Source of the DNA: Cyanophora paradoxa CCMP329
Taxonomy: Eukaryota; Plantae; Glaucophyta
DNA length: 64,000 nt
Assembly: GCA_004431415.1 (NCBI GenBank)
Contig: QPMI01000227.1
Span: forward strand, 92,645 to 156,644
Direction: 5' to 3'
The notes under the pieces are model-generated. The model searched no databases, was not told where the DNA came from, and worked only from the letters and a program-made list of their open reading frames with translations. Below are positions 1,502 through 36,821 of this stretch, in pieces. Position numbers and translations under genes: made by a program. The stretch's first letter is position 1; each line of letters starts with the position of its first letter.

Positions 1502-2026
1502 TTGGGAGAGCGTTCGTCTGCCCAACGCGGAGGCAAGCGCAAGCGGTCCAGCTCTGTGGGGCGTCGCGTTAAGCGCGGTGTTACTGGCCGTCGCACGCGG
1601 TTGTCTCGGTCTATGGTCGTCCCTCGCAACATCTATCGTTTCGCCAGGTACGGGTTCTCGAACGACGTCTCGTTCGCCCTCAACGCCGACGGAAACCATT
1701 TCGGATCCATTACGGCGTACGGTCTCGGCACGGTCGGTGCCATAGGTAGCGCGAGCCCGGTGATGCCGGCGGTTGCGGAGTTCGCCAACCTCTTCGATTC
1801 ATACAAGCTGAACCGCGTCACCATCGAGATCATCAGTCCGTATGATGGTAATCTCGGACCGCAAAACAATTCGACTAGCGCTACGGCTAGCGGTGCATGG
1901 GCCCCGACCCCGAAGATCTACTGGTATTACGACATCGACGACAACACCGCGCCGGCCGATAGTCTAGATCTCCACGAGCGCATTGATAACACAGGCATGC
2001 TAGCTGCGGACATCGCAGAAGCTTGA
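1502..2026 (+). pseudogene. Endogenous CRESS-DNA (circo-like) virus capsid fragment
   Basis: Arg-rich N-arm (KRKRSSSVGRRVKRGVTGRRTRLSR), then NIYRFAR, EFANLFDSYKLNRVTIEI and PKIYWYYDIDDNTAP, typical of ssDNA jelly-roll capsids. No ATG start; C-terminally truncated. Confidence 0.7.
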
Positions 2027-4230: not shown

Positions 4231-4446
4231 GCATTGGGATTTCGCCGATTGCTTACCAGGTTTGCGTGTATGAGCGCCGGACCGCCGGGGCATACATGGT
4301 GAACTGTATAGGCGCATGTCTGCGCCGCCACTACCCTTGTCTGGTTGGTTCACTGTCGATTGTGCCTTGGGCCTTCAGGTCCTTCGCCTTTCGTCACAAC
4401 CGTACAGCTGGCTTGGGCGTGTCTTATACATACTCTTCTTCTTCTT
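4231..4446 (+). mobile_element. Short retroposed element family D (SINE-like or LINE 3' end) with (CTT)n tail
   Basis: Near-identical to copies at 36349-36544 and 54153-54372; ends GTGTCTTATACATACT(CTT)n. Confidence 0.8.
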
Positions 4447-4669
4447 TGGGGGGCGGGGGCGGCCCGCAGCGGGCCGGAGCCGGCCAGCAGAAGGGGCTTG
4501 AGGCGGAGCCCCGCGTCCACGCCCGAGAGGAACCGCAGGAGGATGTTCCTGCGATTACAGACGGTCAGGTTGCGACTTGTTCCCGCAGGCTCATCTCTCG
4601 ACTTGACACAGATGGACACTGCAGTCATATCCCTAGCCATTTGTCTCGGTGTGTGCGAATTTTTGTAAG

Positions 4670-22560: not shown

Positions 22561-25063
22561 ATGGAGTCGTTCTCGGGGCTGGTTGAGGAGCGCGTGGCGG
22601 CTGAGGTCCGTCCCCTGCCGACTCTCCCGTTTAGCAGCCGCGTGCTAACGGCGTCGACGCCTCGCAGCTCCTCCGGCTCGGCTTCAGCACGCACGAGCTT
22701 GTTGTATCCGGAGTTAGCGCCGGTCTGCCGAATGCCGGCAGGGCCGTCCCTGTCTGTGATCCGGAGAACGTGATGCGGCTGATGCGCGGAGAGAACTTCA
22801 TCGTGCAGCTAGCGGACTCGCGCAAGCGCGAGCAGCTTGAGATGAATGTAGTTCAAGTGGTTAAGGACACAGCGACGGGCGAGCGCAAGCGGCACGTCAT
22901 CTCGGGCGTGCACGAGGTGTTGCAGGTGGCTGGAGTCATCGGGGACCTTGACCTCTGCGCCGAGTACGGCATACCGCCGCACATCGTCGAGACCCTGGAC
23001 TCCACGTACCAGCTCGCTATAGCTGCTGGACTCGAAGCGTTAGCGCATGCCGGCATCGAGCTCGACACGCACCACGTGCCCACAGAGCACGGCAACCCAC
23101 ATCTGAAGCATCCCAAGCGGCGGTGGGGCCCACTTCCAGCGGCTCTTCAGGCCTCGACCGGTGTGATTTTCGCGTCATCCTTCCCAGCTCTGGATTCGAT
23201 GGTGGAAGAGGTCTCGCGCTTCGTCGCTCACCGCCTGACGGAGTCGTCGAGGAAAGGCATCATTGAACGCTTGTCTGCATATTCGAAAACGCGCGCTGGA
23301 TCCGAGCAACCGTCCGATGCGACGGCGCAGCTCGAGTCGTACTTGCAGTCTCTGACGGTCGAGCCATCTGGGGATGAAGCGTCCATGCCCGGCTCTTACT
23401 CTTTCAACAGAAAGCTTCTTTTCCAGGTTCGCATAATTTGTTTTTCTCTTGGATTCTCTGTCCGAGAGCTTACGCCTCTTGCAGATCCTGGTCATGGCAA
23501 ATGCACAGTTAGCAGAGCTGATTCATGCTCGCGGGTAGCCTTTTTGGTTCTTGTTCGGATCGTTCAAGCGCTGACATTAGGTACACGTGCAGGCCAAACA
23601 CGCAGATCAATGCTGCCTGTGCATCGACTGCTCAGGCCATTGCTTTGGCTGAAGGTGAAGTGGGCCAGAGGGCTTGTCGTGTTCTCGTTGAATTTTTATA
23701 TTCTTGTTCCAGATTGGATTCGTGTTGGACGGTGCGAGCGGGTTGTCGTAGTTTCCGGCGACAACGCAACATCGGACAACCTTCTCCGCTACATAGGGAC
23801 TGGTGCTGCGCTGATTGCGCATATGACTGCACGCACTTCTCCTCACGAAGTGGTTCCAGGCTTCATGGCCCTTGGAGCTGCCTGCACACAGGCAGAAGTG
23901 GAGGCAGCCGCCCTTCCCTTCGATGCGCGGCGGTCGGGCATGGTCCTTGGAGCCGGTGCAGTTGGTCTCGTCATCGAAAGCGAAGTTGCAGCGCTACGGC
24001 GCGGCGCTCGGCCACTGTGCCGGCTGCTGGGAAGCCACATCGCCAATTCAGCATTTCATGCTTCACTTCTCGACGCAAAACACATCAGGTGCAACTGGAC
24101 TCCCTTGCGTTACCTTGACTCCTGCTGACCGAGTTTTCAGCTCAGAACTTGACGTGTTCTTGACACGCATGGAACGCCGTCACGGCATTTCGCGATCCGA
24201 CATCGCAGACAGGTGAATATATGATCTTCTCCTTTTTTTGCAGCATCCTTACGCATTGTCACAGCTGCATATACATGAGCCATGAAACTTTTACATGCGC
24301 ACGAGGTGGATGCGCCAAGGTGGAGATTGATGCTCTCCGCTCTGCCTTTCTGCGGTGTCCTGGTGGTATCTCCCGGATTACTATTGCCAACACCAAGGGC
24401 TTCACAGCGCACCCGATGGGTGTTGGGATTGAAGGTTGGCGCACCTCTGTCTTTGTCGGCGTACCATCTTGTTTACAAAGCTGCAGATGCTGTTGCGGTC
24501 GAGTGCTTGCATCACAAACTTGTACCTCCCATCGCAAATTTTAAGCAATCGTAAGAACGGTTTCCTTCTCATGGGCTTCGGGGTTGAACTTGATCTCGAT
24601 CTCAGTGATCCTTGTCTTGGGGGAGACCTTAATCTTTCGCATGGAGGCCACCTGGATGCACGCTTCTGCTTGCGGTTTGCAGCTGGTGTGTAGATTCCCT
24701 TCCTTCCGTTTTCGGGCTCATGCAACCTCCTTCAATGATCAATAACCGCCAGGATTTGGGTCTCACTTCGTATATCTTCTCTACGCGTCGTACTCTTCAC
24801 CGTCGCCTTCTGCTCTTCGGGCCCTGGCCGTAAGCATGACTCATTCTCGTGGATGTAATTTTCTCAGTTTCTCGCAGATGGAATCGACTGCTCCCCAAGG
24901 GGCAGCTGCCCTCGCTGCTGAGCCCGACTCAGAGCCAGAGCACAAGAAGCACGTGCGACATCACCACAAGCCTCACCACTACGATTCACATCATTTCCAT
25001 GAATCACATCTTAACCTTCAACCAAAAAGCTTCATTTCAACTCCAGGCCTGGCCCAGCCTTAG
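22561..25063 (+). CDS. Stand-alone beta-ketoacyl synthase (PKS/FAS-type KS), multi-exon
   Basis: [10 protein letters not shown], catalytic [51 protein letters not shown]. Confidence 0.88.
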
Positions 25064-25856
25064 CTCCTCAACGTTGGTGTTTTCATTTAAGCTGCTCTTT
25101 ACACTGTAGCTGTATCTCACCAGCAACATGGCTGTCGTTTCTGGAAAAGACAAGGTCGCAGCCATAGAAAAGCTCTGCTACAACAGAAATGCATGCATTC
25201 GACGTGCCACGAGATGTCAGCTGGCTGTTTCAATTCTTTGATCATGTAAATCTACTGCGGGCTGAGTAGGCAAATCGCCATTTAAACAGCTGCCGCAGTG
25301 CACCAAGTCCGAGATCGCTGAGAGAGTCGAAATCGAAAATATGAATAATATTCTCTACTTCCGAGTTCAATTCTTTGATCATATAATCTTGTCAGCATGC
25401 GCAGATCGACGCTCGCGATCGCGATCGAGCTCTACAGAACGATACTATGATAACTAAGTACCTGTGATCATGATCATCATGGCATGATCATGATCATGAG
25501 CGTGTGCCCTCTGAACGCTCTAGATCTAGCCGCCTGAGCTATATATACATATATAGAGAACGAGTTTTTGTGCTGCATCAAATCTATCAAGTTATTAGCC
25601 AGTAGAACGTTTCAAACTGAACGGAGTTTGCGTCACGCCCCGCCCATTGTTAACTTCTTCCGCCAATGAAATTAGCCCAGCGCAAACTTGAGCTCGAACT
25701 TGGCCTCGTACACAGTGGCGTACACACGCGGCCACAACGGTCACAGTAACGGTCAGCAGGCCGGCTTGCTAGTCAGCTTCCCTCGGCTAGGCCGGACTAG
25801 CTAGCTTCCCGCCATCGCGCACGCCCGAGCGCGAGCATTCCTGCACGCCGCCGTGC

Positions 25857-27761
25857 ATGAAGCAGTCAAAGCGAAAGGAACCCAGCCTCTGGGATGACGG
25901 CTTCGACGAGGCCCGACGTCGGCACCGCTGGCACGGCAAGCGACCCGACAGCAGCAGCTCGTGGGCCGGCAAGGGCAACATGAAGCGTGTCAACAAGATC
26001 ACTCAGCAGGCGCGCAAGGCGAAGGAGCCCAAGCTCCCTGACCTCGACATCCTCAAGGGCGAGCACCCCGCGGCAACGGTCCGCTGCCTGGACACCAGCG
26101 GCCGCGCCTACCACGTTCGCCTTGGCGACTTCGTCATCTGTTCAGTTAGCTCAGACACCCAGCTGTGTCCAGAACTCAGCGTCGTTCGCCCGAAGCCCTT
26201 CCATTTCCCGCGCCCAGGTGAAACGATTTTGGCGCGAGTCGAGGCGAGTTCCCAACACAGACGAAGGCGAAGCGCGGCGACTTCAACTACTCCGTCAACG
26301 GCGTCATCCTTCGGCGCTTCGTGCGCCCGGAGGACTCCGATGTGAAGGACTGCGGGCTCGGCAGCGTGATCATCAAGGCAGACGGGAGCAGGCAGCCGTG
26401 GCCATCGCAAACCACCTCATCTACTACTCGAACGTGACGGTCCGCCCGCCGCGCCCGCGCCCCGTTCCAGCGTCCGATGCCCGTGCGCGCAGGTTCACGC
26501 ACCCGCGAAGGTGGTGGCCGCGGACGAGTACAAAGCCCTCAACACGCCGATCCCCACATCTACGTCTGTAAGCAAATCATGACGTTCCCGGGCGACGGCT
26601 CCTTCCAGTTCGACGTCGCCCTCGCCTTCAACGCGAGGCTCAAGCGAGTGGCGAAGAAGAAGATGGCGTGCTTCCTCCGGCCGCTGTCGAGGCCGGAGGA
26701 GCGCGTGGAGGCGATTGGCTACCTTCAGGACGCCGCGCGAACGCCCTCAAGCGCCGGAAGACCGGACGCAGCTTGTCAACGTCAAGATCCCGGTGGCCGG
26801 GCCGGCAATGTTGGTCTGCGGCTCTTATGACTCGTTCGAAGTTCTTTTTCCTATCCTCTAACGGTGCGCATCGCAGGAGAACATCGTGGCGCAGGTCGCG
26901 CACGTCGCCACGCCCATCGACCCGAAGACGGGCCAGCCGATCCGGTTGACAAGCTGCCGGCGGCGAATCGCTTCGTTATCGAGCTTCCGGACCGCGAGAC
27001 CGCTGCTGGTGGAAGCCGCTTCCTTTTTCCCGCTCGCTGTTCTTTTTCCGACCTCTTTGCAGCTGTTCTCGGTCCCTCCGGCGTGGCGCAAGCGTCCAAG
27101 CGCGTCTGCAAGCGGGACGCGGACGGGAAGGCGATCCGGAAGCACAGCGAGATGCAGACGTCACCGTCGAGAAGGCGTACGGCGGCTTAATCGTGCCGCG
27201 CCACACGGGCTCCCATGACGTCGTCCAGTTCGACGAGCGTGCGCCCGGCCGCCCTCGCCGCGCCGCTCGCTTACGAAGCTCTGCTCCTTGGGCGCGGCAG
27301 GTCCCGGTCGGATCGTGGCCACGAAGCGCTCGGGCAGGAAAGGTGGGCACGTCACGCTCGAGCTTCCGAGCTACGAGTACGGCCCGACGGCGAGCGCATC
27401 GCCAGCCTCGCGGGGCCCTCGCGGCTGTCCCGTGAAGCGCCCGCGCCGGTGCCGCGCCGGCGCCAACACCGTCGCCAAGGCGCCGCCTGTCCCGAAGCAG
27501 CCCCTTCAGAACCTGCCGCCGCCGCCCTGCCGGCCCCGCCGCCGCCCTGCCGGCCCCCGCCGTCGCCGCCCCGCGGCCCCGCCGCCGCCGCCCTGCCGGC
27601 CGCCGCCGCCGCCGCCCGCCGCCCGCCCCGCCGGTCGCCGCCCTGTCGGCCCTGCTGCTGCTGCCCACCGGCCGCTGCCGCCCTACCTGCCCCCGCCGCA
27701 TCCGCCTCGGTCCCCAAGTGCGCCCCTCCCCTCGCCCCCGCTCGGCTACTTGCTCGCCTAA
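25857..27761 (+). pseudogene. BAH-domain protein, frameshifted (element cargo)
   Basis: YHVRLGDFVIC...GETILARVE...RRFVRPEDS...HLIYYSN...KVVAADEYKA...IYVCKQI matches the BAH pattern, spread across frames and introns; 3' end approximate. Confidence 0.6.
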
Positions 27762-27938
27762 TCCTGCAGCAGGAAGGATCGCGCGGCACAGCTCGCGGCC
27801 GCGGTGGCGGCGCGCAAGAGGGCAAAGTCGTGAAGCTGCTACTGAGAATCGCACTATCTAGGTTACAAGGTGCGCTATGTCTGGTCCAAATCCATTTCGT
27901 CTATTTCCCCTCCGCTAGATCGTCTGCTAGAACCTCTG

Positions 27939-30900
27939 CTAGGGCCTATCATCGAAATCGAGCATGTTGGCGCCCTCATCCTCCGCCTCCATCTCCTCCT
28001 CCGCCTCCTCCTCTGCCTCGGCGTCGTACTCGGCGGTCTCCTCCTCCTCCTCCTCCTCGTCCCGCTCTCCTCGGGCACTCGTCCTCCGGCACCGGATCCC
28101 CTCCTGCAGCTCAATATCCTCGTCGATCTCCTCCTCGTCCGCAGGCAGGGCACCGCTGCCACCTCCTCGCCCCCGGCGGCGCCGCCGCCGCCCCTTCGCC
28201 TGCATAGCCGCTGACCGGTGGGGACGGGCCGCAGGTCGGGGGATGAAGGGCCCATCTGGCCAGGCCTTGGCGGCGACGGGCGCGTCGTACTCGGCGTGGC
28301 AGCGTCCTTCCCGCCGGCGCTCGCCTCCGTCATGTTCCGCATCCACAGCGCCAGGCGCCGCCGCTGGTGCGTCATGATCTGCTTGAGCATGTCGAGGTCC
28401 TTGTTCCACCGCCACCGAGAGACGTGACGGTGTGTCGCAGGCGCCGAAGGAGGCCCATGTAGGACTCGATGACCTCGCAGCTCCAACGGCCGGGCGCGTT
28501 CGTGTTGTCGACGCGCGCCAGAACGCGAGGTGCGCAAGCGTCGAGTGCATGTAGCGTGTGAAGATCTTCCATAACGGGAAGTGTGTCTCCATCAGGCCCT
28601 GGAGCTCGGCGACGGCCTCGATAACTTGCTGCCGCGCCTCCTCGTCGGGCTTCATGTTCCGCTCGTACTGGTAGATGATCTGGCGGAGCTGCCAAATCTC
28701 GTGCATGCCCCTCGTCTTCTCGCTCCAGCTCTCCTTACTGTCGCCGAAGCAGATGCTGAGAGGGTGTCGGGCGCCTCGGGGTCCTCCAGGATCTTCTTGG
28801 CGGTGTTGGCGGAGATCTTCTGGAAGAACTTGTAGGTGGCCCCGTTCTCGGTCTTCTCGAACTTGATGTTCCGCGCGTATTTATCGCGAAGATGACGCTG
28901 CAGGTCTTCGATGCGCTTCTGCTGGTCCTCGGAGGCACCACAGGCGAGGGCGAGGAAGAAGTAGACGAAGAACCCGGCCACCCAGCTCTTGATGCCGTGC
29001 AGGGCGTCGTCGAGCCGGACCTGAGGTGCGCGTTGGCGTCCGCTGAGGCGAGGTGTCGCGGGCTTCTCACCTCGACGGCAGCGACGGGCAGCATGCTGTT
29101 CGGGAGCGGCTGCAGGAGGGCGTTGGCGTCGTGCTCGGGGTGCGGATTCTCTGTTCGCTGGCTGGAGGGAGGCCGTCCCGATCCCGCGGCCCTGCTGCGC
29201 GCACGACTTCGACCGCCGAGCACTCGGACCTGCAGTAACGTGAGCCCCATGCCGAATCTCAGCGCGTGTGACTCGGCGAACTGACCCGCGTCGGTGGACA
29301 GAATCGCAGTGCGGGCACAGGTCGAAGCCGAGGAGGACGCGGAGGAACTTGTAGTCGCCCGTCACCAAGAATTCGACCTCGACGGCTTGTCGTGCTCGTA
29401 CCCGGGGATCAGGGTGAGCGGGTTCTCGTTCAGGTACTCGACCATGTCGGCGAGGGGCTTGATGCGTGGGCGCAGGTTCTCCTCGCTGTCGCTACCGCCG
29501 AAGAGCATTAGGGGCAGGAGGGCGTAGCAGCTCTGAACGCCCTTCAGCGGGTGGTACGCCTGCGTCCCGTCCTCCTCGATGACGTAGTAGCCGTCGACGA
29601 TTGCCACGATGCAGGTCATGCCGTCGGTCGTGGAGACGCTCTTCCCGCGGAACGCGATCGTCCCGTCGCCCGCCAGGCGGACTCGAGGTCTGATCTTCTT
29701 CCCCCTGTGCTTGTGCAGCGGGACGAAAGCGCTGATGAGGGCCGACAGGGCGGGCGTCGGCGTGACAGCTCTGCGGGCGGCGGCGCTGCCGCCTCTCCGC
29801 CCGCCGCCGGCGCTGCCGCCTCTCCGCCCGCCGCCGGCGCTGCGCTCGACGGAGGCACAAAGAGCTCGAGCATGACGCCCGGCTTGCCCTTGTTCTCCTC
29901 GTCGCCGACGCCCGCCGCTGTTTCGACGATCTGCACGATCTGCACCGCTCGGTGAGCCTCGTCCCTCACCCCGCCCGCGCGCGCGCGCCGCGCCTTCTCG
30001 AGGTCATCGTTGACCTTGCCCGTAGCTTCGTGATGCAGTGCTTCGACGGGAGGAAGGCTCGCAGCCCCACGAAGTGCTTCTTCAGGGCCTTCTTGAGGAG
30101 CTTCGTGAACTCAAAGTACGTCGCCTGCCCGGGTCGGTTTAGAACGGGATGGGGGGTTAAAACATTCGAGAAAGGGCGCACGTCCGAGATGCAGTGGCGG
30201 TCCTTCCACTCTAGAATCTCGCAGTCGGGGAAGGTGTCCCGCAGCTTCCTGCAGGCGATGCTCATCGCCTTCTTCACTTGCAGCTGACCCGATTTGCTCG
30301 TTTCCAGGGCTCGTTGGGCCTGCGGACGGTGGTTCAGAAAGGTGCTCTTCTCCAACGATTTTGTAGCCTATTAAAGTACGATTCTCGGTAGCTCTTTTTA
30401 TGTATAATAACGCGCACTGCGTGTGGCCGATGATGCTCACGAGGCGGCGTGCCTCCGCCTCCAGCGCCTCCCTCCTCTTCTGATAGGCGCCCTCCTCCTC
30501 TCCTTTGTTCCTGGGGCGCCCTGGATAAGCATGCATATGCCTGCGCGCGCGCCGCCCCGCCTTGTACCTCGCGAAGTTCTTTTTAAACATGGGGAGGCGG
30601 ATCTGGATGTCCGGACTCGCAGCGTTTAGAATCGTCGAGAGCAGCATGCGGAGGAACCGCGTGCGCCGCTGCCTGGACGTATCCGAGCATCCCTTCCCAG
30701 GGACCTGCCTAGCTATGCGCGAGATGGTCGCTGCACGCTGTGCCGAAGTCCGCGGGACCTTGGCGCGCTTCGACTGGTGCTCCTCCCTAAGCTTCTTGTT
30801 CTCCGCCTCAAGCACTGCGATGCGCTCGTCGCGCGCTTTGAGCGTCGCCTTGCGGACGATCCGCTCCTCAGGCGGCACATCTTCCTTGCCGCGAGCGCGT

Positions 30901-31016
30901 TTCGGGGCGGTGCCGGGGCCGGGGGCCGGCCGCGGCGCCGGGCTCGGCGCCTCATTAAGAACTGCATTCGTCTGCTCGCGGCCGGGCAGAGAGCATACAC
31001 TCGTAAGCGCGGGCAA
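27939..31016 (-). pseudogene. RAG1/Transib/Chapaev-like DDE transposase with frameshifts
   Basis: VRLAGDG (D), PLMLFGGSDSEENL, FLVTGDYKFL (D), CPHC, DALH, YMHSTLAH, GRWSCEVIES (E); acidic C-terminal tail. Confidence 0.8.
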
Positions 31017-31017
31017 G

Positions 31018-31536
31018 TCAAGTCATGACATCGAATTTGAATGAGCGGCATACCACGTCGGCGCCGAACGCGCGACGACCGCGCTGCTGCTGCTGCTCTG
31101 GGCTAATCTGAGGCGATTGCGGGCTCGCTGGAGCCGATGGCGACCCGGGTGGCGAAGCTGGAGGGCTCTGCAGGATGCACTGGAGGAACACAGCCACTGC
31201 GGTGGCCTCTTGAAGCGCCGCCGTGCAAGCTAAGCTATGCGGATACAATGGAGACGCAATGCCGCGCGCCTCCAGTTCCAGGTGGGCGTTTCGGCTGTGG
31301 GTGAGCACTGCGATGATCCGCATAAGCGCCTGGTACGCGACCGACGCGTCCGCCATCTCTAAAACGACTGCTGCGGGCGCTGGAAACGTTTGGGGCGCGG
31401 GCTGGGCCGCGGGACGGGGCGCGATGGGTCGCTGCATCGCGCGGGCGGGTTCAAAACTCGGAAAAAAAGATCGCGTGTACCTCCCCTGCCATCTGCGGAA
31501 GCGGCAGCTCCGAGCGCCGCGAGCAAGCATACACAT
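31018..31536 (-). CDS. Hypothetical protein (element cargo)
   Basis: 172 aa ORF with a plausible helical core and Pro/Ser/Gln tail; no recognisable family. Confidence 0.3.
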   Translation of the reverse strand: MCMLARGARSCRFRRWQGRYTRSFFPSFEPARAMQRPIAPRPAAQPAPQTFPAPAAVVLEMADASVAYQALMRIIAVLTHSRNAHLELEARGIASPLYPHSLACTAALQEATAVAVFLQCILQSPPASPPGSPSAPASPQSPQISPEQQQQRGRRAFGADVVCRSFKFDVMT

Positions 31537-31838
31537 CCGCGACAGTTAGGCGCCGAAGAGCAGCAGGCGAGCCCAGCATGCGCGATAATGCGCAATTGCG
31601 ATGCATAGCTACCTTAGGCGAAGCGGCTGGTCCACCCGCGCGGTCCTTGCCGGCCGCGATGCTCGCTCGTCGATATGGGTATGACGCGCTAAGCAAGGGG
31701 AGCATGCCCAGACTGGGTACGCAAACTGCTGAACGTCCAACTCCAGCTGAACGCCCTGCAGCTGGTGGGCCTGAAGCAGCCTCAAGCGTTAGCTATGTCG
31801 CATCGACAGTGTAGCTATGTTAGCTGTGGAGCGAAGCA

Positions 31839-32571
31839 TATGCCCGCTGACTACGTGTCCGAGGAGGAGGACCAGGAGGAGACCATCAACGCGCCGTGCA
31901 ATCGCCCAATGACTTCGTCTGTCATCGAGATCAACAGCAGCGACTCGGAGAGCGATGGACCAGCGGCAGCGCGCCGAGCGCAGGGCGCGCATGAAGGCGG
32001 ACGAGGAGCGCGCGCTCGAGGAGGAGGATGAGATCAGGCGGCGCCACCAGGCAGCTTTGGAGGTCAACCTCGCAATAGAGCGCGACTCGGTGAGGCCATA
32101 CAAGCTGGCCGAGCTCAAGCAGTTGCTGGAGTACGCGCGCGCGTGGATGCGCGAGCACGAGCAGCTGTACGAGCAGTTCGAGGTCGCGCTGGCGCACAAC
32201 AACCTCCTCGAGGCCATTAACCTGCGGTCGGAGATCCGCAAGCACCGCAGCACGGCGCGCTTCTGCGGGCAGGACCCCTCGGGCTCTACGAGGAGGCGGC
32301 CTTCAAGCCTCTCTATGACAACGTGACGGCCTTGCAGCGGCGGGCGGGGCAGATGGAGCATTTCGGCGACAATCTCTTCAAGTGCGCGGAGCACTTCCAG
32401 CGGGTGCGCATCCGGCAGCAGCAGGCGGCGGCGGCGGCGGCGGCGGAGGCGGCGGAGGCGGCGGCGGAGGCGGACGGGGCTGCTGCTGCTGCTCGGTGCA
32501 AGCGCCGCCGCCTGCGTCGCGGCGACGGCGTGCTCGTCTCGCGGCCGGACGATGCCGACGACGAAGCGTAG
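31839..32571 (+). pseudogene. Coiled-coil/acidic hypothetical protein, frameshifted (element cargo)
   Basis: MPADYVSEEEDQEE...ERALEEEDEIRRRHQAALE...; coding-like codon use across three overlapping frames. Confidence 0.45.
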
Positions 32572-32848
32572 CGCCGTTAGCCGCCCCCGCCCCGCCGTTA
32601 GCCGCCCCCGCCCCGCCGGCCCCCGCCCCCGCCCGCCGGCCCCCGCCCCCGCCCCGCCGGCCCCGCCCCCGCCCCGCCCGCCCCGCCCCCGCCCCGCCCC
32701 GCCCCGCCCCGCCCCGCCCCGCCCCGCCCCGCCCGCCCCGCCCCGCCCGCCCCGCCCCCGCCCCGCCCCGCCCCGCCCCGCCCGCCCCGCCCCGCCGGCC
32801 CCGCCCCCGCCCGCCGGCCCCGCCCCGCCCCGCCGGTCGCCGCCCTGC
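32572..32848. repeat. (GCCCC)n GC-only low-complexity tract
   Basis: Nearly pure C/G; flanked by a ~34 bp direct repeat; similar tract at 27510-27740. Confidence 0.85.
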
Positions 32849-33805
32849 CGGCGACGGCGTCCTCGTCTCGCGGCCGGACGATGTCTGCAGCTAGAGTCAC
32901 CAGCTGCAGTCTGCACCTGGCTTGAATACGACAGATTTACTAGTTATTCTGCTATCGTGCGCGCACCGTGGCACCGTGGCACCGTGGCACTCAGTGACTA
33001 CCGAGAGTGGCGGGCGGGCTGGCGGGGCGGGCTGACAGGGCGGGGCGCCTGGCGGGACAGTCGGGGGCCTCCGGGACACTCTGGCAGTCCGGGGGCCTCG
33101 GGAGCCTATTTTCGCGCCATACAAGGCCTCCCCGACCCTGCAGCTGCATAGGAGGCCTTATATAGTGCTTTAAAAAGGTTCTCTAAGCTTTTTTCGATGT
33201 CTCCCAGCTCCTGGGGCGATGGGCCCAATTTGGAAGGGCCAAAAGTCAGCAGAAGACTAGCTGTAACGTAGTGTATAGGCGTATGATGAGTCATATGGTA
33301 TGACGGGTTAAATGGCCCATCGCGGGGCTTTGTGCAGGGCACTAAATAACGCCGTGTGACGCCTCTACATCTTGAATAAAAAGTTCTAATCAAGATACGA
33401 GGCTGCCGTGCTTCAATCGCAAGCCTCGGAGTGCAGATTCCCTGGCAGATCAAAAATTGCGAACGCGATACCGGGGGTCGCCGCGCGCTCGCAGCCTTGC
33501 GAAACCTTGAGAGCGGATAAGATTGCCGCCGACAGCGAGCCCAGCTCCCCGCTCGCAGTGCAGCCGCGCGCTTAAGGCGCCGGCCAGCCACTTGGCCCCG
33601 GCTGCAGCTGCTCCGGCACGGGCGGCCTCAGCCAGCCGGCACCATGCTATCGCAGCTTCAGCCATGAGCCTCGGAGAGGGCGGAAGTCTCCGAGGCTCGG
33701 TCCGCGATCCAGGGCAGGCGTGCGTATGTTCCAAGTTCGCGGGCGAGGGCGTTCCAAGTTATGTTGAGAGCTCTAGCTATGCAGGACGAAGCGAGCGGGC
33801 CGGGG

Positions 33806-35559
33806 CTAGCGCCCGATGGCGGGCGCCTCGAAAGGCGACGTCTCCGGCGGCACAGCAGCGTGTAGCTGCTGGACCGCGGCGACCCACCCTGCGACCCTAG
33901 GCCCCCGGGGTTCCCGCATGAGCACGTCCCTCATGTAGAGATACTCGATAACGGCCTCCAGCTCCTCCACCTCCTTTATGTACATGCGCTCCTCCTTCCG
34001 CCACACCTTCGCCTCACGCTCCAACTCCAAGTCCCAATTCCTCTTCATCCTTGAGACCTGCGCCGCGCCGCGTTACGCGCCAGCGGGCGCACGCACGCGT
34101 GTGGGCAATCGCGGACCTTGTTTTCCAAGTCATCCACCTTCGTCTGCAGCGCAGCGTTCTGGTTCTGCAGCTCCTCGCACTCCTCTTCGAGGTTTTTGAC
34201 CCGAGTCGCTCTCTGCGGGCGCCGGAGGGACCGCCGTCAGCAGCGCATTGCGGGCGCCGGCGGCGCGGGCGGCGCGGCGGCCGGCGGGCTCACCAGACTG
34301 GCGTTGAGCTGCATCATCTCCTTCTCCAGCTGAGCGATCTTCTCCTCCCGTTGAGCGATCTGCCGCTGCTTCTCCCTGTTGGCCCACCGCAGATCAGGGA
34401 GCTCCCGCTCCAGGGAGCTGCACTTCTGTTGGAGCTCCTCACGCTGCGCCGGTGCACGGAGGAACACGTCGACTTTCGCCTTCAGTTGATTGGCGAGCTC
34501 CGCGCCAGTTAGACCCTTGTCTAGGACATCCTGCGGCCCGAATCAGCGAGGCAAGCTGCGGGCGAAGCGCACGGCGGCGTGAAACGGCGCGCGCACACGC
34601 TGCTGAAGGTACTCGATCGCTTCAAGGAGCTTGGACGCCATGCGAACCGCATCGGAAACCCGCTTGCAGCCGGTGAGCCTCCGATAGAGTGCGGCGTCCT
34701 CCTCCTCGATGCGAAAGCGGTGCCGCCCGGCTTGTCCCAGGGGTGAATCGATCTTCCTCCTCGCCCGTCATCTCGACATCGCACTTGCGCCGCTTGCACT
34801 GCTGCTTGGTGGACGTGGCGGGCTTCTTCGGGGCTGGCTTCTTCGCGGCTGAGCTGGCAGGCGACGGCGCGACAGAGGGATCGTCCATATACCGCTCCAT
34901 GGCAACGAAGGGATCCTCATATTGCTCGCTCGGTGCCGCCGCGGGCGAAGGCTGGGAGGTCGCCGCCGCTGCCCGCTTGCGACTCACGCGCTTAGGCATG
35001 TCCACGGGGGTCGCTGGCGAGGCCGCTGCCGCCGGCGGCTGCGTGCGTGGAGGCGTGGCCGGCTGATCATGCGAAGGCTGCGATTGCGAGGGCGCAGCTA
35101 CTACCCGCTTGCGACGCGGGCGATCAGGCGTGTACACGGGGTCGCTGATGAGGCAGCTGCGACAGGCGGCGTACACGGCTGTACAGGCGTACCCCCCCCC
35201 AAAGGCGTCCCTGGCGTCTCACAGCAGCCGCTGCCGGGGCTCTGCTCGAGCTCTGAGCGTACTGGCGAGACTTGTGGGGAGTCGCTCCCGCCCGCCGGCT
35301 CCGCCGCGGGAGGCGCCAGCGCGACCGCGGCCGTCGCATGCGCAGCTGGCGCTGCATGCGCAGGCTGAACGACTTGCTCGCTCAAAGCTGCGTCGCCAAA
35401 GTCGTCTGGATTCACGTCCTCGCCGAGGTCGTCCTGGCTGCCGCAGGTGCTGCCGCCAATCTGGCCGTGCCGCGGCCTGCCATCGCTGGCGCCGCCCAGC
35501 CACGCTCTAATGGAACCGAACGCTGAGCCGACCTTGGCAGACAGCACAGAGAGCGGCAT
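33806..35559 (-). pseudogene. Coiled-coil protein with disordered N-terminus, frameshifted (element cargo)
   Basis: LQQKCSSLERELPDL...EKIAQLEKEMMQLN and MKRNWDLELEREAK...VEELEAVIE heptads. Confidence 0.45.
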
Positions 35560-36348
35560 CTCGATCGCCGAACGCTAAGCTATAAGCGCTTTTGCTTTTC
35601 CCGCGCAAGTCCGTGGCTGGCCGCAATCTAGCTGCAGCTGGCCGTGGCTTGGAAGGGGGGGAGATGGCTTGGGGGGGATATAGAATTTGGTCTAGCCAGC
35701 TCGAACTCGAACTCAGCCGGCTGATAGCCGCCGTGACACGGCCGTGTTCAAAATTCAAATTCCATCCATTGTTAAAGCTCGCGAACTAGCGGGATGTCCA
35801 AAAGGTCGCGCCGTTTTCGGCCCGTCGAGGTCCGTCCGGGGCCGTCTGCGACATGCGAAACAGCTCCTTACGGAACTTCGGAACTGATATCGATTAATAT
35901 TTCAGATATCGATGCACCTAGGCCGCGGCCGCCGCCGGCGCCTCGCTATCGTCGAGAACCTTGACCAACCTAGTCCTTGCCAAGTTGCTCACAGAGTCAC
36001 ACTGTGACAATCGTCAAGATCCTTGACACCCAGAGTTTCGGGCAAACTGCATTCAGCAACTTGCAGAACGTCGATGGACGGACATCACTAGCTAATATAG
36101 CCCATGCTGCCTCTTGACGCTAGCATGAACTTTGCCATGCTGCTGCTGCTGGACTTCGATTTGCGAGTCATTTAAACATATTCAACAATATTGTCTAGGG
36201 GTATGCCGCAGGGGATCACCGGCACACCCCGCTGAGATACAAAGGAAGATGAAGAAGAGACAGAGCGGAGTGCAGCGCAGGAGGGCACACACGCACGCCA
36301 TAAATTTCCCCTATTGCAAAAATTGGTCCCCTACATGGTAGACTGAAA

Positions 36349-36544
36349 AGAAGAAGAAGAGTATGTATAAGACACGCCCAAGCCAGCTGTACGGTTTTGA
36401 CGAAAGGCGAAGGACCTGAAGGCCCAAGGCACAATCGACAGTGAACCAGCCAGACAAGGGTAGTGGCGGCGCAGACATGCGCCTATACAGTTCACCATGT
36501 ATGCCCCGGCGGTCCGGCGCTCATACACGCAAACCAGGTAAGCA
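36349..36544 (-). mobile_element. Family D retroposon copy with 14 bp TSD
   Basis: TSD ATGGTAGACTGAAA at 36335-36348 and 36545-36558; further truncated + strand copies at 36563-36697 and 36735-36788. Confidence 0.9.
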
Positions 36545-36821
36545 ATGGTAGACTGAAAGGCGTTTGCGCGGCCACTACCCTTGTCTGGCTGGTTCACTGT
36601 CGATTGTGCCTTGGACCTTTGGGTCCTTCACCTTTCGTCAAAACCGTACAGCTGGCTTGGGCGCGTCTTACTAAGTTTTACATACTCTTCTTCTTCTCCT
36701 GTTGGTAGAGAGCAGTAGAGAGGGGGAGACGCTACAAAACCGTACAGCTTGCTTGCGGGGGTCTTATACATACTCTAGATCTTCTTCTACCTAACCCTCA
36801 CCCTCACTCTTTGCCCTTACC

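What the first reader, a model, noticed from the sequence alone, without database searches (positions are those of the whole stretch)
25857..31016. BAH chromatin-reader gene convergent with the RAG1-like transposase (ProtoRAG-like layout)
Seen: the + strand gene facing the transposase tail-to-tail encodes a BAH-pattern domain (YHVRLGDFVIC, ILARVE, RRFVRPEDS, LIYYSN, KVVAADEY, IYVCKQI) plus an unknown C-terminal domain. Known: ProtoRAG carries convergent RAG1L/RAG2L genes, vertebrate RAG2 reads H3K4me3 via a PHD finger, and BAH domains bind nucleosomes or methylated histones. Inference: an independent pairing of a RAG1-type transposase with a chromatin reader, possibly for target selection (e.g. 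subtelomeric heterochromatin) or anti-silencing. This is the best candidate for an undescribed system in the window.
Basis: inference. Interest (0 to 1): 0.9.

Follow-up and report, generated by a model that had tools for sequence, protein, structure and literature searches.

The report
Algal transposon with cage-less BAH passenger
A young jumping gene of the alga Cyanophora paradoxa carries an enzyme built like RAG1 (the antibody-gene shuffler) and, facing it, a gene for a much-changed BAH chromatin-binding domain that has lost the pocket for methylated histones, so it looks like an accessory gene rather than a stand-in for RAG2.

Summary
The layout is real, but the unit is larger: a 10,265-bp four-gene DNA transposon (25608-35872) with CGT...ACG ends and a 3-bp GAA duplication, shown by an empty site in this window. 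Host: Cyanophora paradoxa. About 22 near-identical copies of the + strand gene (g1) exist; all 9 other loci with a retrieved transposase model have g1 beside it. This copy differs from intact models only by 1-bp deletions (probably assembly error). The transposase has RAG1-spaced DDE and zinc motifs and its helical half best matches RAG1/BbRAG1L, but it has no sequence relative in 1.84 billion proteins, and RAG1-like folds mark the whole CMCT clade. g1 gives no Pfam, PDB or Atlas hit, yet five ordered BAH blocks score 35-40 bits against two disjoint Pfam-verified BAH sets (0/600 nulls): probably BAH (~80%). The three methyl-lysine cage positions read I/R/V, so a methyl-histone reader is unlikely. 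No kelch, PHD, RSS-like ends or 5-bp TSD: not ProtoRAG or Transib. Best reading: a new CMCT lineage with a chromatin-type accessory gene, as in Plavaka or VANDAL elements. The scan had noted this element on many other copies; the BAH test and the cage loss are this report's additions.

The parts
25608..35872 (.). Whole transposon, 10,265 bp, termini 5'-CGT...ACG-3', only weak terminal similarity beyond that (16/35 nt)
   Evidence: Self-BLAST shows the flanks joined in an inverted paralogue at 47158-48403
25605..25607 (+). Left target-site duplication GAA
35873..35875 (+). Right target-site duplication GAA
47594..47596 (-). Empty site: single GAA in the second copy of the 1.25-kb host repeat
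25857..27833 (+). g1: basic N-terminus, BAH-like domain, second unknown region with a small beta-rich part (aa ~400-470), Pro/Ala tail; several introns; 10 single-base deletions in aa 1-490 of this copy, no substitutions
26109..26581 (+). BAH-like domain (aa 85-225 of model P0024, includes a probable 78-nt intron 26142-26219); methyl-lysine cage positions I124, R154, V156
   Evidence: cage from PMC6013494
27834..27938 (.). Gap between the facing stop codons: 41-105 nt depending on the transposase end used, so 3' ends probably overlap
27875..31356 (-). g2: RAG1-like DDE transposase, ~950-1000 aa; D at 29665-29667, D at 29354-29356, CxxC, DALH, H-x4-H at 28547/28532, E at 28465-28467
31840..32571 (+). 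g3: small acidic/helical gene of unknown function, divergent from g2
   Evidence: no Pfam hit
33660..35559 (-). g4: multi-exon gene with coiled-coil part, convergent with g3 (lower end approximate)
   Evidence: only coiled-coil-type weak hits

Best explanation
An autonomous, recently amplified cut-and-paste DNA transposon of the CMCT clade (RAG1/Transib-like branch, own ends). g2 cuts and pastes it (shown: insertion with 3-bp TSD and DDE/zinc motifs; inferred: hairpin chemistry as in RAG1). g1 is a fixed accessory gene (shown: inside the element, beside g2 in every locus checked) whose N-terminal half is a much-diverged BAH fold (probable, ~80%) without the aromatic cage (shown in alignment). 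Inferred: it is a nuclear protein that binds nucleosome surface or host chromatin proteins rather than a methyl mark, and helps the element stay expressed or accessible in a host that CpG-methylates its transposons, as VANC, TET/JBP or Plavaka accessory genes are thought to. It is not needed as a catalytic partner in the way RAG2 is.
For: Boundaries, TSD, empty site. ~22 near-identical g1 loci and 9/9 other transposase loci flanked by g1. Ordered-block BAH score 38.4 bits vs shuffles 3.8+-4.7, 0/2000, 810 decoys max 16.5; motif-masked 31.7, 0/2000; same register with two disjoint BAH subsets on the whole protein, 0/600 in two nulls. Cage loss. BAH domains also bind unmethylated histones, nucleosome cores and other proteins (PMC13068663). 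C. paradoxa methylates DNA transposons (PMC12344493). Accessory chromatin genes in CMCT and Mutator elements (PMC12730594, bioRxiv 2025.02.11.637652, bioRxiv 2024.04.02.587720).
Against: No Pfam/PDB/Atlas BAH hit; HMMER local 4-5 bits, hhalign E 0.06; score is a third of real BAH domains; a rough extreme-value p of ~1e-4 would not survive correction over all Pfam families. AlphaFold model unusable (pLDDT 32). Copies descend from one master, so linkage shows no selection. No functional, expression or chromatin data were obtained.
Confidence: 0.45

Rival explanations
1. g1 is a RAG2 analogue: it binds the transposase and docks the transpososome on particular chromatin, steering target choice.
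Against: No kelch, acidic hinge or PHD; cage absent; g3/g4 form a second convergent pair, so convergence is not special; ends and TSD unlike RAG/Transib; subgroup I Transibs keep that region without RAG2 (PMC9435367); other copies reported in an exon and a viral-like gene (unchecked notes).
Confidence: 0.12
2. g1 is not BAH-derived; it is another beta-rich accessory, for example a TnpA-like protein that binds the element's weak ends, and the BAH motifs are chance.
For: No database-level hit by any standard search; invariant BAH W and E are lost; weak TIRs could need a second end-binding protein as in EnSpm (TnpA small beta-barrels).
Against: Five blocks in order with near-BAH spacing, the last two ungapped over ~45 residues; same register from disjoint BAH subsets; transposase and g1 C-half controls score at background.
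Confidence: 0.2
3. The protein is a relic or neutral passenger; what matters is the g1 transcription unit, whose read-through makes antisense RNA over the transposase and dampens it.
For: Stops only 41-105 nt apart; cage and conserved W/E lost; two earlier notes report mainly antisense RNA over the transposase (s1-534747, s1-607531; not checked here).
Against: g1 keeps an intact 560-585-codon multi-intron frame with GC3 0.85-0.89 in exons, unlike a decayed passenger; no host parent or close relative found.
Confidence: 0.2

Closest known systems
ProtoRAG / RAGL transposons (BbeRAG1L-RAG2L; AanRAGL of Aureococcus)
   Same: RAG1-type core spacing (D-D 104, D-E 262; RAG1 D-E 253), CxxC and H-x4-H, helical half best matches BbRAG1L/RAG1; a second gene faces the transposase
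   Different: Partner has no kelch, hinge or PHD; four genes; CGT...ACG ends without heptamer/nonamer; 3-bp not 5-bp TSD; no detectable sequence similarity
Transib (subgroup I)
   Same: RAG1-like DDE core without RAG2; occurs outside animals
   Different: No CAC termini, 3-bp TSD, three extra genes, D-E distance longer than 206-214
CMCT clade: EnSpm/CACTA, Plavaka, ESTA, Chapaev (PMC12730594)
   Same: C(2)C and H(3-4)H between second D and E; 2-5-bp TSD; large size with accessory genes (red-algal Plavaka: three accessory genes incl. SET, methylase, 2OG oxygenase); ESTA and TnpD also hit RAG1; PlavakaA ends TGT...ACA resemble CGT...ACG. From memory, not verified here: the Pfam Plavaka entry mentions a C-terminal BAH domain
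   Different: Ends not CA...TG; no Pfam hit to those transposases; motifs around the catalytic residues look closer to RAG1/Transib (from memory); BAH-like domain is a separate gene
SHL/EBS, BAHD1, RSC-type BAH domains
   Same: Five core blocks in order; GD-x-V, R-P-E-D, K-V...E-Y, Y-V-C; His88 equivalent kept
   Different: Cage Y/W/Y replaced by I/R/V, conserved E lost, longer loops, ~1/3 of typical score
VANDAL/VANC anti-silencing system
   Same: DNA transposon with an accessory chromatin-type gene in a methylating host (functional analogy only)
   Different: Mutator superfamily, MAIL1-like fold; no anti-silencing shown here

Membership tests
ProtoRAG/RAGL | RAG1-like core with DDE and zinc ligands | tested here: met
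ProtoRAG/RAGL | RAG2-like gene (kelch +/- acidic hinge, PHD) | tested here: not met
   no kelch/PHD in g1 by Pfam or sequence
ProtoRAG/RAGL | RSS-like TIRs starting CAC | tested here: not met
   CGT...ACG, no heptamer near ends
ProtoRAG/RAGL | 5-bp TSD | tested here: not met
   GAA, 3 bp; a 5-bp parse needs a mismatch
Transib | CAC heptamer TIRs and 5-bp TSD | tested here: not met
Transib | Phylogenetic placement of the transposase | not testable with these tools
   no relatives retrieved
CMCT clade | C(2)C and H(3-4)H between second D and E | tested here: met
   definition. Exact reading at the CxxC exon junction rests on gene models
CMCT clade | 2-5-bp TSD | tested here: met
CMCT clade | 5'-CA..TG-3' termini (most members; PlavakaA has TGT..ACA) | tested here: not met
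   CGT..ACG; not obligatory
BAH domain (PF01426) | Pfam gathering score 30.8 | tested here: not met
   no hit at E<=10
BAH domain (PF01426) | Core strands in order and register | tested here: met
BAH domain (PF01426) | BAH beta-barrel fold | tested here: inconclusive
   AlphaFold pLDDT 32, no fold match
Methyl-lysine-reading BAH | Aromatic cage (SHL Y41, W63, Y65) | tested here: not met
   I124, R154, V156
Methyl-lysine-reading BAH | Histone or nucleosome binding | not testable with these tools
   needs bench work

The most novel reading that the evidence does not exclude
g1 is a dedicated partner subunit of a RAG1-type transposase that docks it on nucleosomes through a cage-less BAH surface: an independent invention of the RAG2 role in a glaucophyte, in an element with non-RSS ends and 3-bp duplications.
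Probability: 0.12. Interest if true: 0.8.

Novelty: new variant of a known kind. Interest (0 to 1): 0.42.

Why it matters
A young, probably intact RAG1-fold transposase with different ends (CGT...ACG) and a 3-bp duplication gives an outgroup to test which features of RAG/Transib chemistry (heptamer recognition, 5-bp stagger, need for a partner) are tied to the fold. A BAH-like accessory gene would add a reader-type fold to the known list of transposon-borne chromatin genes. If it were a true partner subunit, it would show that RAG1-type enzymes recruited chromatin adaptors more than once.

Tried and rejected
Pfam on window pieces and on intact models, with and without intron 1 parts: no BAH, no RAG1 (only DUF1280 E 0.3). 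PDB sequence and profile searches: nothing. ESM Atlas features: nothing. HMMER over 1.84 billion representatives with the transposase profile: only Cyanophora models. Metagenome, viral and phage searches: no relatives. Motif scans for Transib references returned phage methylases and HNH proteins only. Single-sequence AlphaFold of g1 failed. hhalign and local HMM weak. P0035 (ENA member of the g1 cluster) is unrelated. A 4-bp GAAC or 5-bp duplication was rejected: the 3-bp parse gives matched ends without a mismatch. Iyer et al. 2014 (Plavaka-BAH link) is not held.

Full report
Observation. EukProt hits identify the genome as Cyanophora paradoxa; a TTAGGG array starts at 57255.

Boundaries. Self-BLAST shows that 24779-25608 and 35873-36311 are the two halves of a 1.25-kb repeat whose uninterrupted copy lies inverted at 47158-48403. 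The junctions give a 3-bp GAA duplication and an insert of 10,265 bp, 25608-35872, with ends CGT...ACG; beyond that the ends match at 16 of 35 positions (2.5% of random pairs reach this), with no CAC heptamer. The insert holds four genes: g1 (+, 25857-27833), g2 (-, 31356 to ~27900), g3 (+, ~31840-32571), g4 (-, 35559 to ~33660). There are thus two convergent pairs. The g1 and g2 stops are 41-105 nt apart.

Copies. 23 g1 gene models from about 22 loci were retrieved, nearly identical in sequence. At all 9 other loci for which a transposase model came up, g1 has the next gene number (8) or is two numbers away (1); orientation cannot be read from ids, and the remaining g1 loci were not checked for g2. 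The window's copy matches intact models at 480/480 and 363/363 aligned residues, with 10 and 6 one-base deletions and no substitution, which fits consensus error in repeats of a PacBio assembly (PMC6704402). The element is young. Linkage therefore shows that g1 is part of the element, not that the pair is under selection.

Is g1 a BAH? Standard searches say nothing, and the fold prediction failed. I therefore fetched real BAH domains from metagenomes by a DNA motif, confirmed ten with Pfam and aligned twenty. A local HMM ranks g1 models first among 938 targets but at only 4-5 bits; hhalign gives E 0.06; a glocal alignment gives z 3.3. Scoring five ungapped core blocks in order with free loops gives 38.4 bits, against 3.8+-4.7 for 2000 shuffles (max 24.4) and at most 16.5 for 810 decoy windows; with the motif used for fetching masked, 31.7 against max 26.0 and 27.2. 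Automatically cut blocks on the whole protein give 1/1000, the transposase control 179-339/1000. SHL-type and non-SHL subsets give the same register for the first four blocks, 0/600 under sequence shuffles and column-permuted profiles. Real BAH domains score 80-130.

What it can read. In SHL the cage is Y41, W63, Y65 (PMC6013494); the same spacing holds in a fetched SHL-like domain, and the aligned g1 residues are I124, R154, V156. Methyl-lysine-binding BAH domains use this cage; others bind unmodified histones, nucleosome cores or proteins. So the parallel with the H3K4me3-reading RAG2 PHD (PMC10629977) fails at the residue level, and g1 has no counterpart of the kelch core that RAG2 needs for cleavage.

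Mechanism. Shown: insertion, duplication, multiplicity, gene content. Probable: BAH fold without cage. Inferred: g2 alone or with other element proteins mobilises the element; g1 is a nuclear accessory that contacts nucleosomes or host chromatin factors and eases silencing in a host that CpG-methylates DNA transposons (PMC12344493). Comparable accessory genes are known in Plavaka (SET, methylase, 2OG oxygenase), fungal CMCT elements (TET/JBP), EnSpm (TnpA) and VANDAL (VANC). Rivals: RAG2 analogue (0.12), non-BAH end-binding protein (0.2), passenger whose transcription supplies antisense to g2 (0.2).

Novelty. Not a member of ProtoRAG or Transib (ends, TSD and partner fail); best filed as a new CMCT lineage with RAG1-like core, unusual ends and a probable BAH accessory gene. 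I found no paper on it. RAG1L and Transib outside animals are already known (PMC9435367). The scan had noted the same element on many other copies.

Limits. No fetched contig was taken for human. The Plavaka-BAH link and motif comparisons with RAG1 and EnSpm residues beyond the cited numbers are from memory.

Noticed in passing
window 57255-64000: TTAGGG telomere array; the element lies ~21 kb from it
   Followed up: no
window 1502-2026 (+): Circovirus-type capsid ORF (Pfam Circo_capsid E 1.6e-6, below cutoff), an endogenous CRESS-like fragment
   Followed up: partly
window 24779-36311 and 47158-48403: 1.25-kb repeat without terminal repeats, in two inverted copies; one hosts the transposon and abuts the 3' part of a ketoacyl-synthase-like gene (22770-24780)
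   Followed up: partly
window 52140-53079 / 54483-55422: 940-bp perfect inverted repeat next to the telomere, with related 120-400-bp pieces at 49939-50334 and 56403-56725
   Followed up: no
window 4231-4447, 36347-36546, 54157-54372: 200-bp repeat ending in a (TCT)n tail, like the 3' end of a non-LTR element
   Followed up: no
window 25608-25623: The element's left end is itself a near-palindrome (CGTT...AACG)
   Followed up: no
P0023 (tig00020848 g14527/g14528): Gene models show the C-terminal half of g1 repeated in tandem at that locus
   Followed up: no
window 25608-35872: This copy is ~600 bp shorter than the 10.9-kb copies in earlier notes; one-base deletions explain only a small part
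   Followed up: no
P0024 aa 400-470: Small beta-rich region in g1 with a GDxV-like start; no BAH or Pfam match
   Followed up: partly
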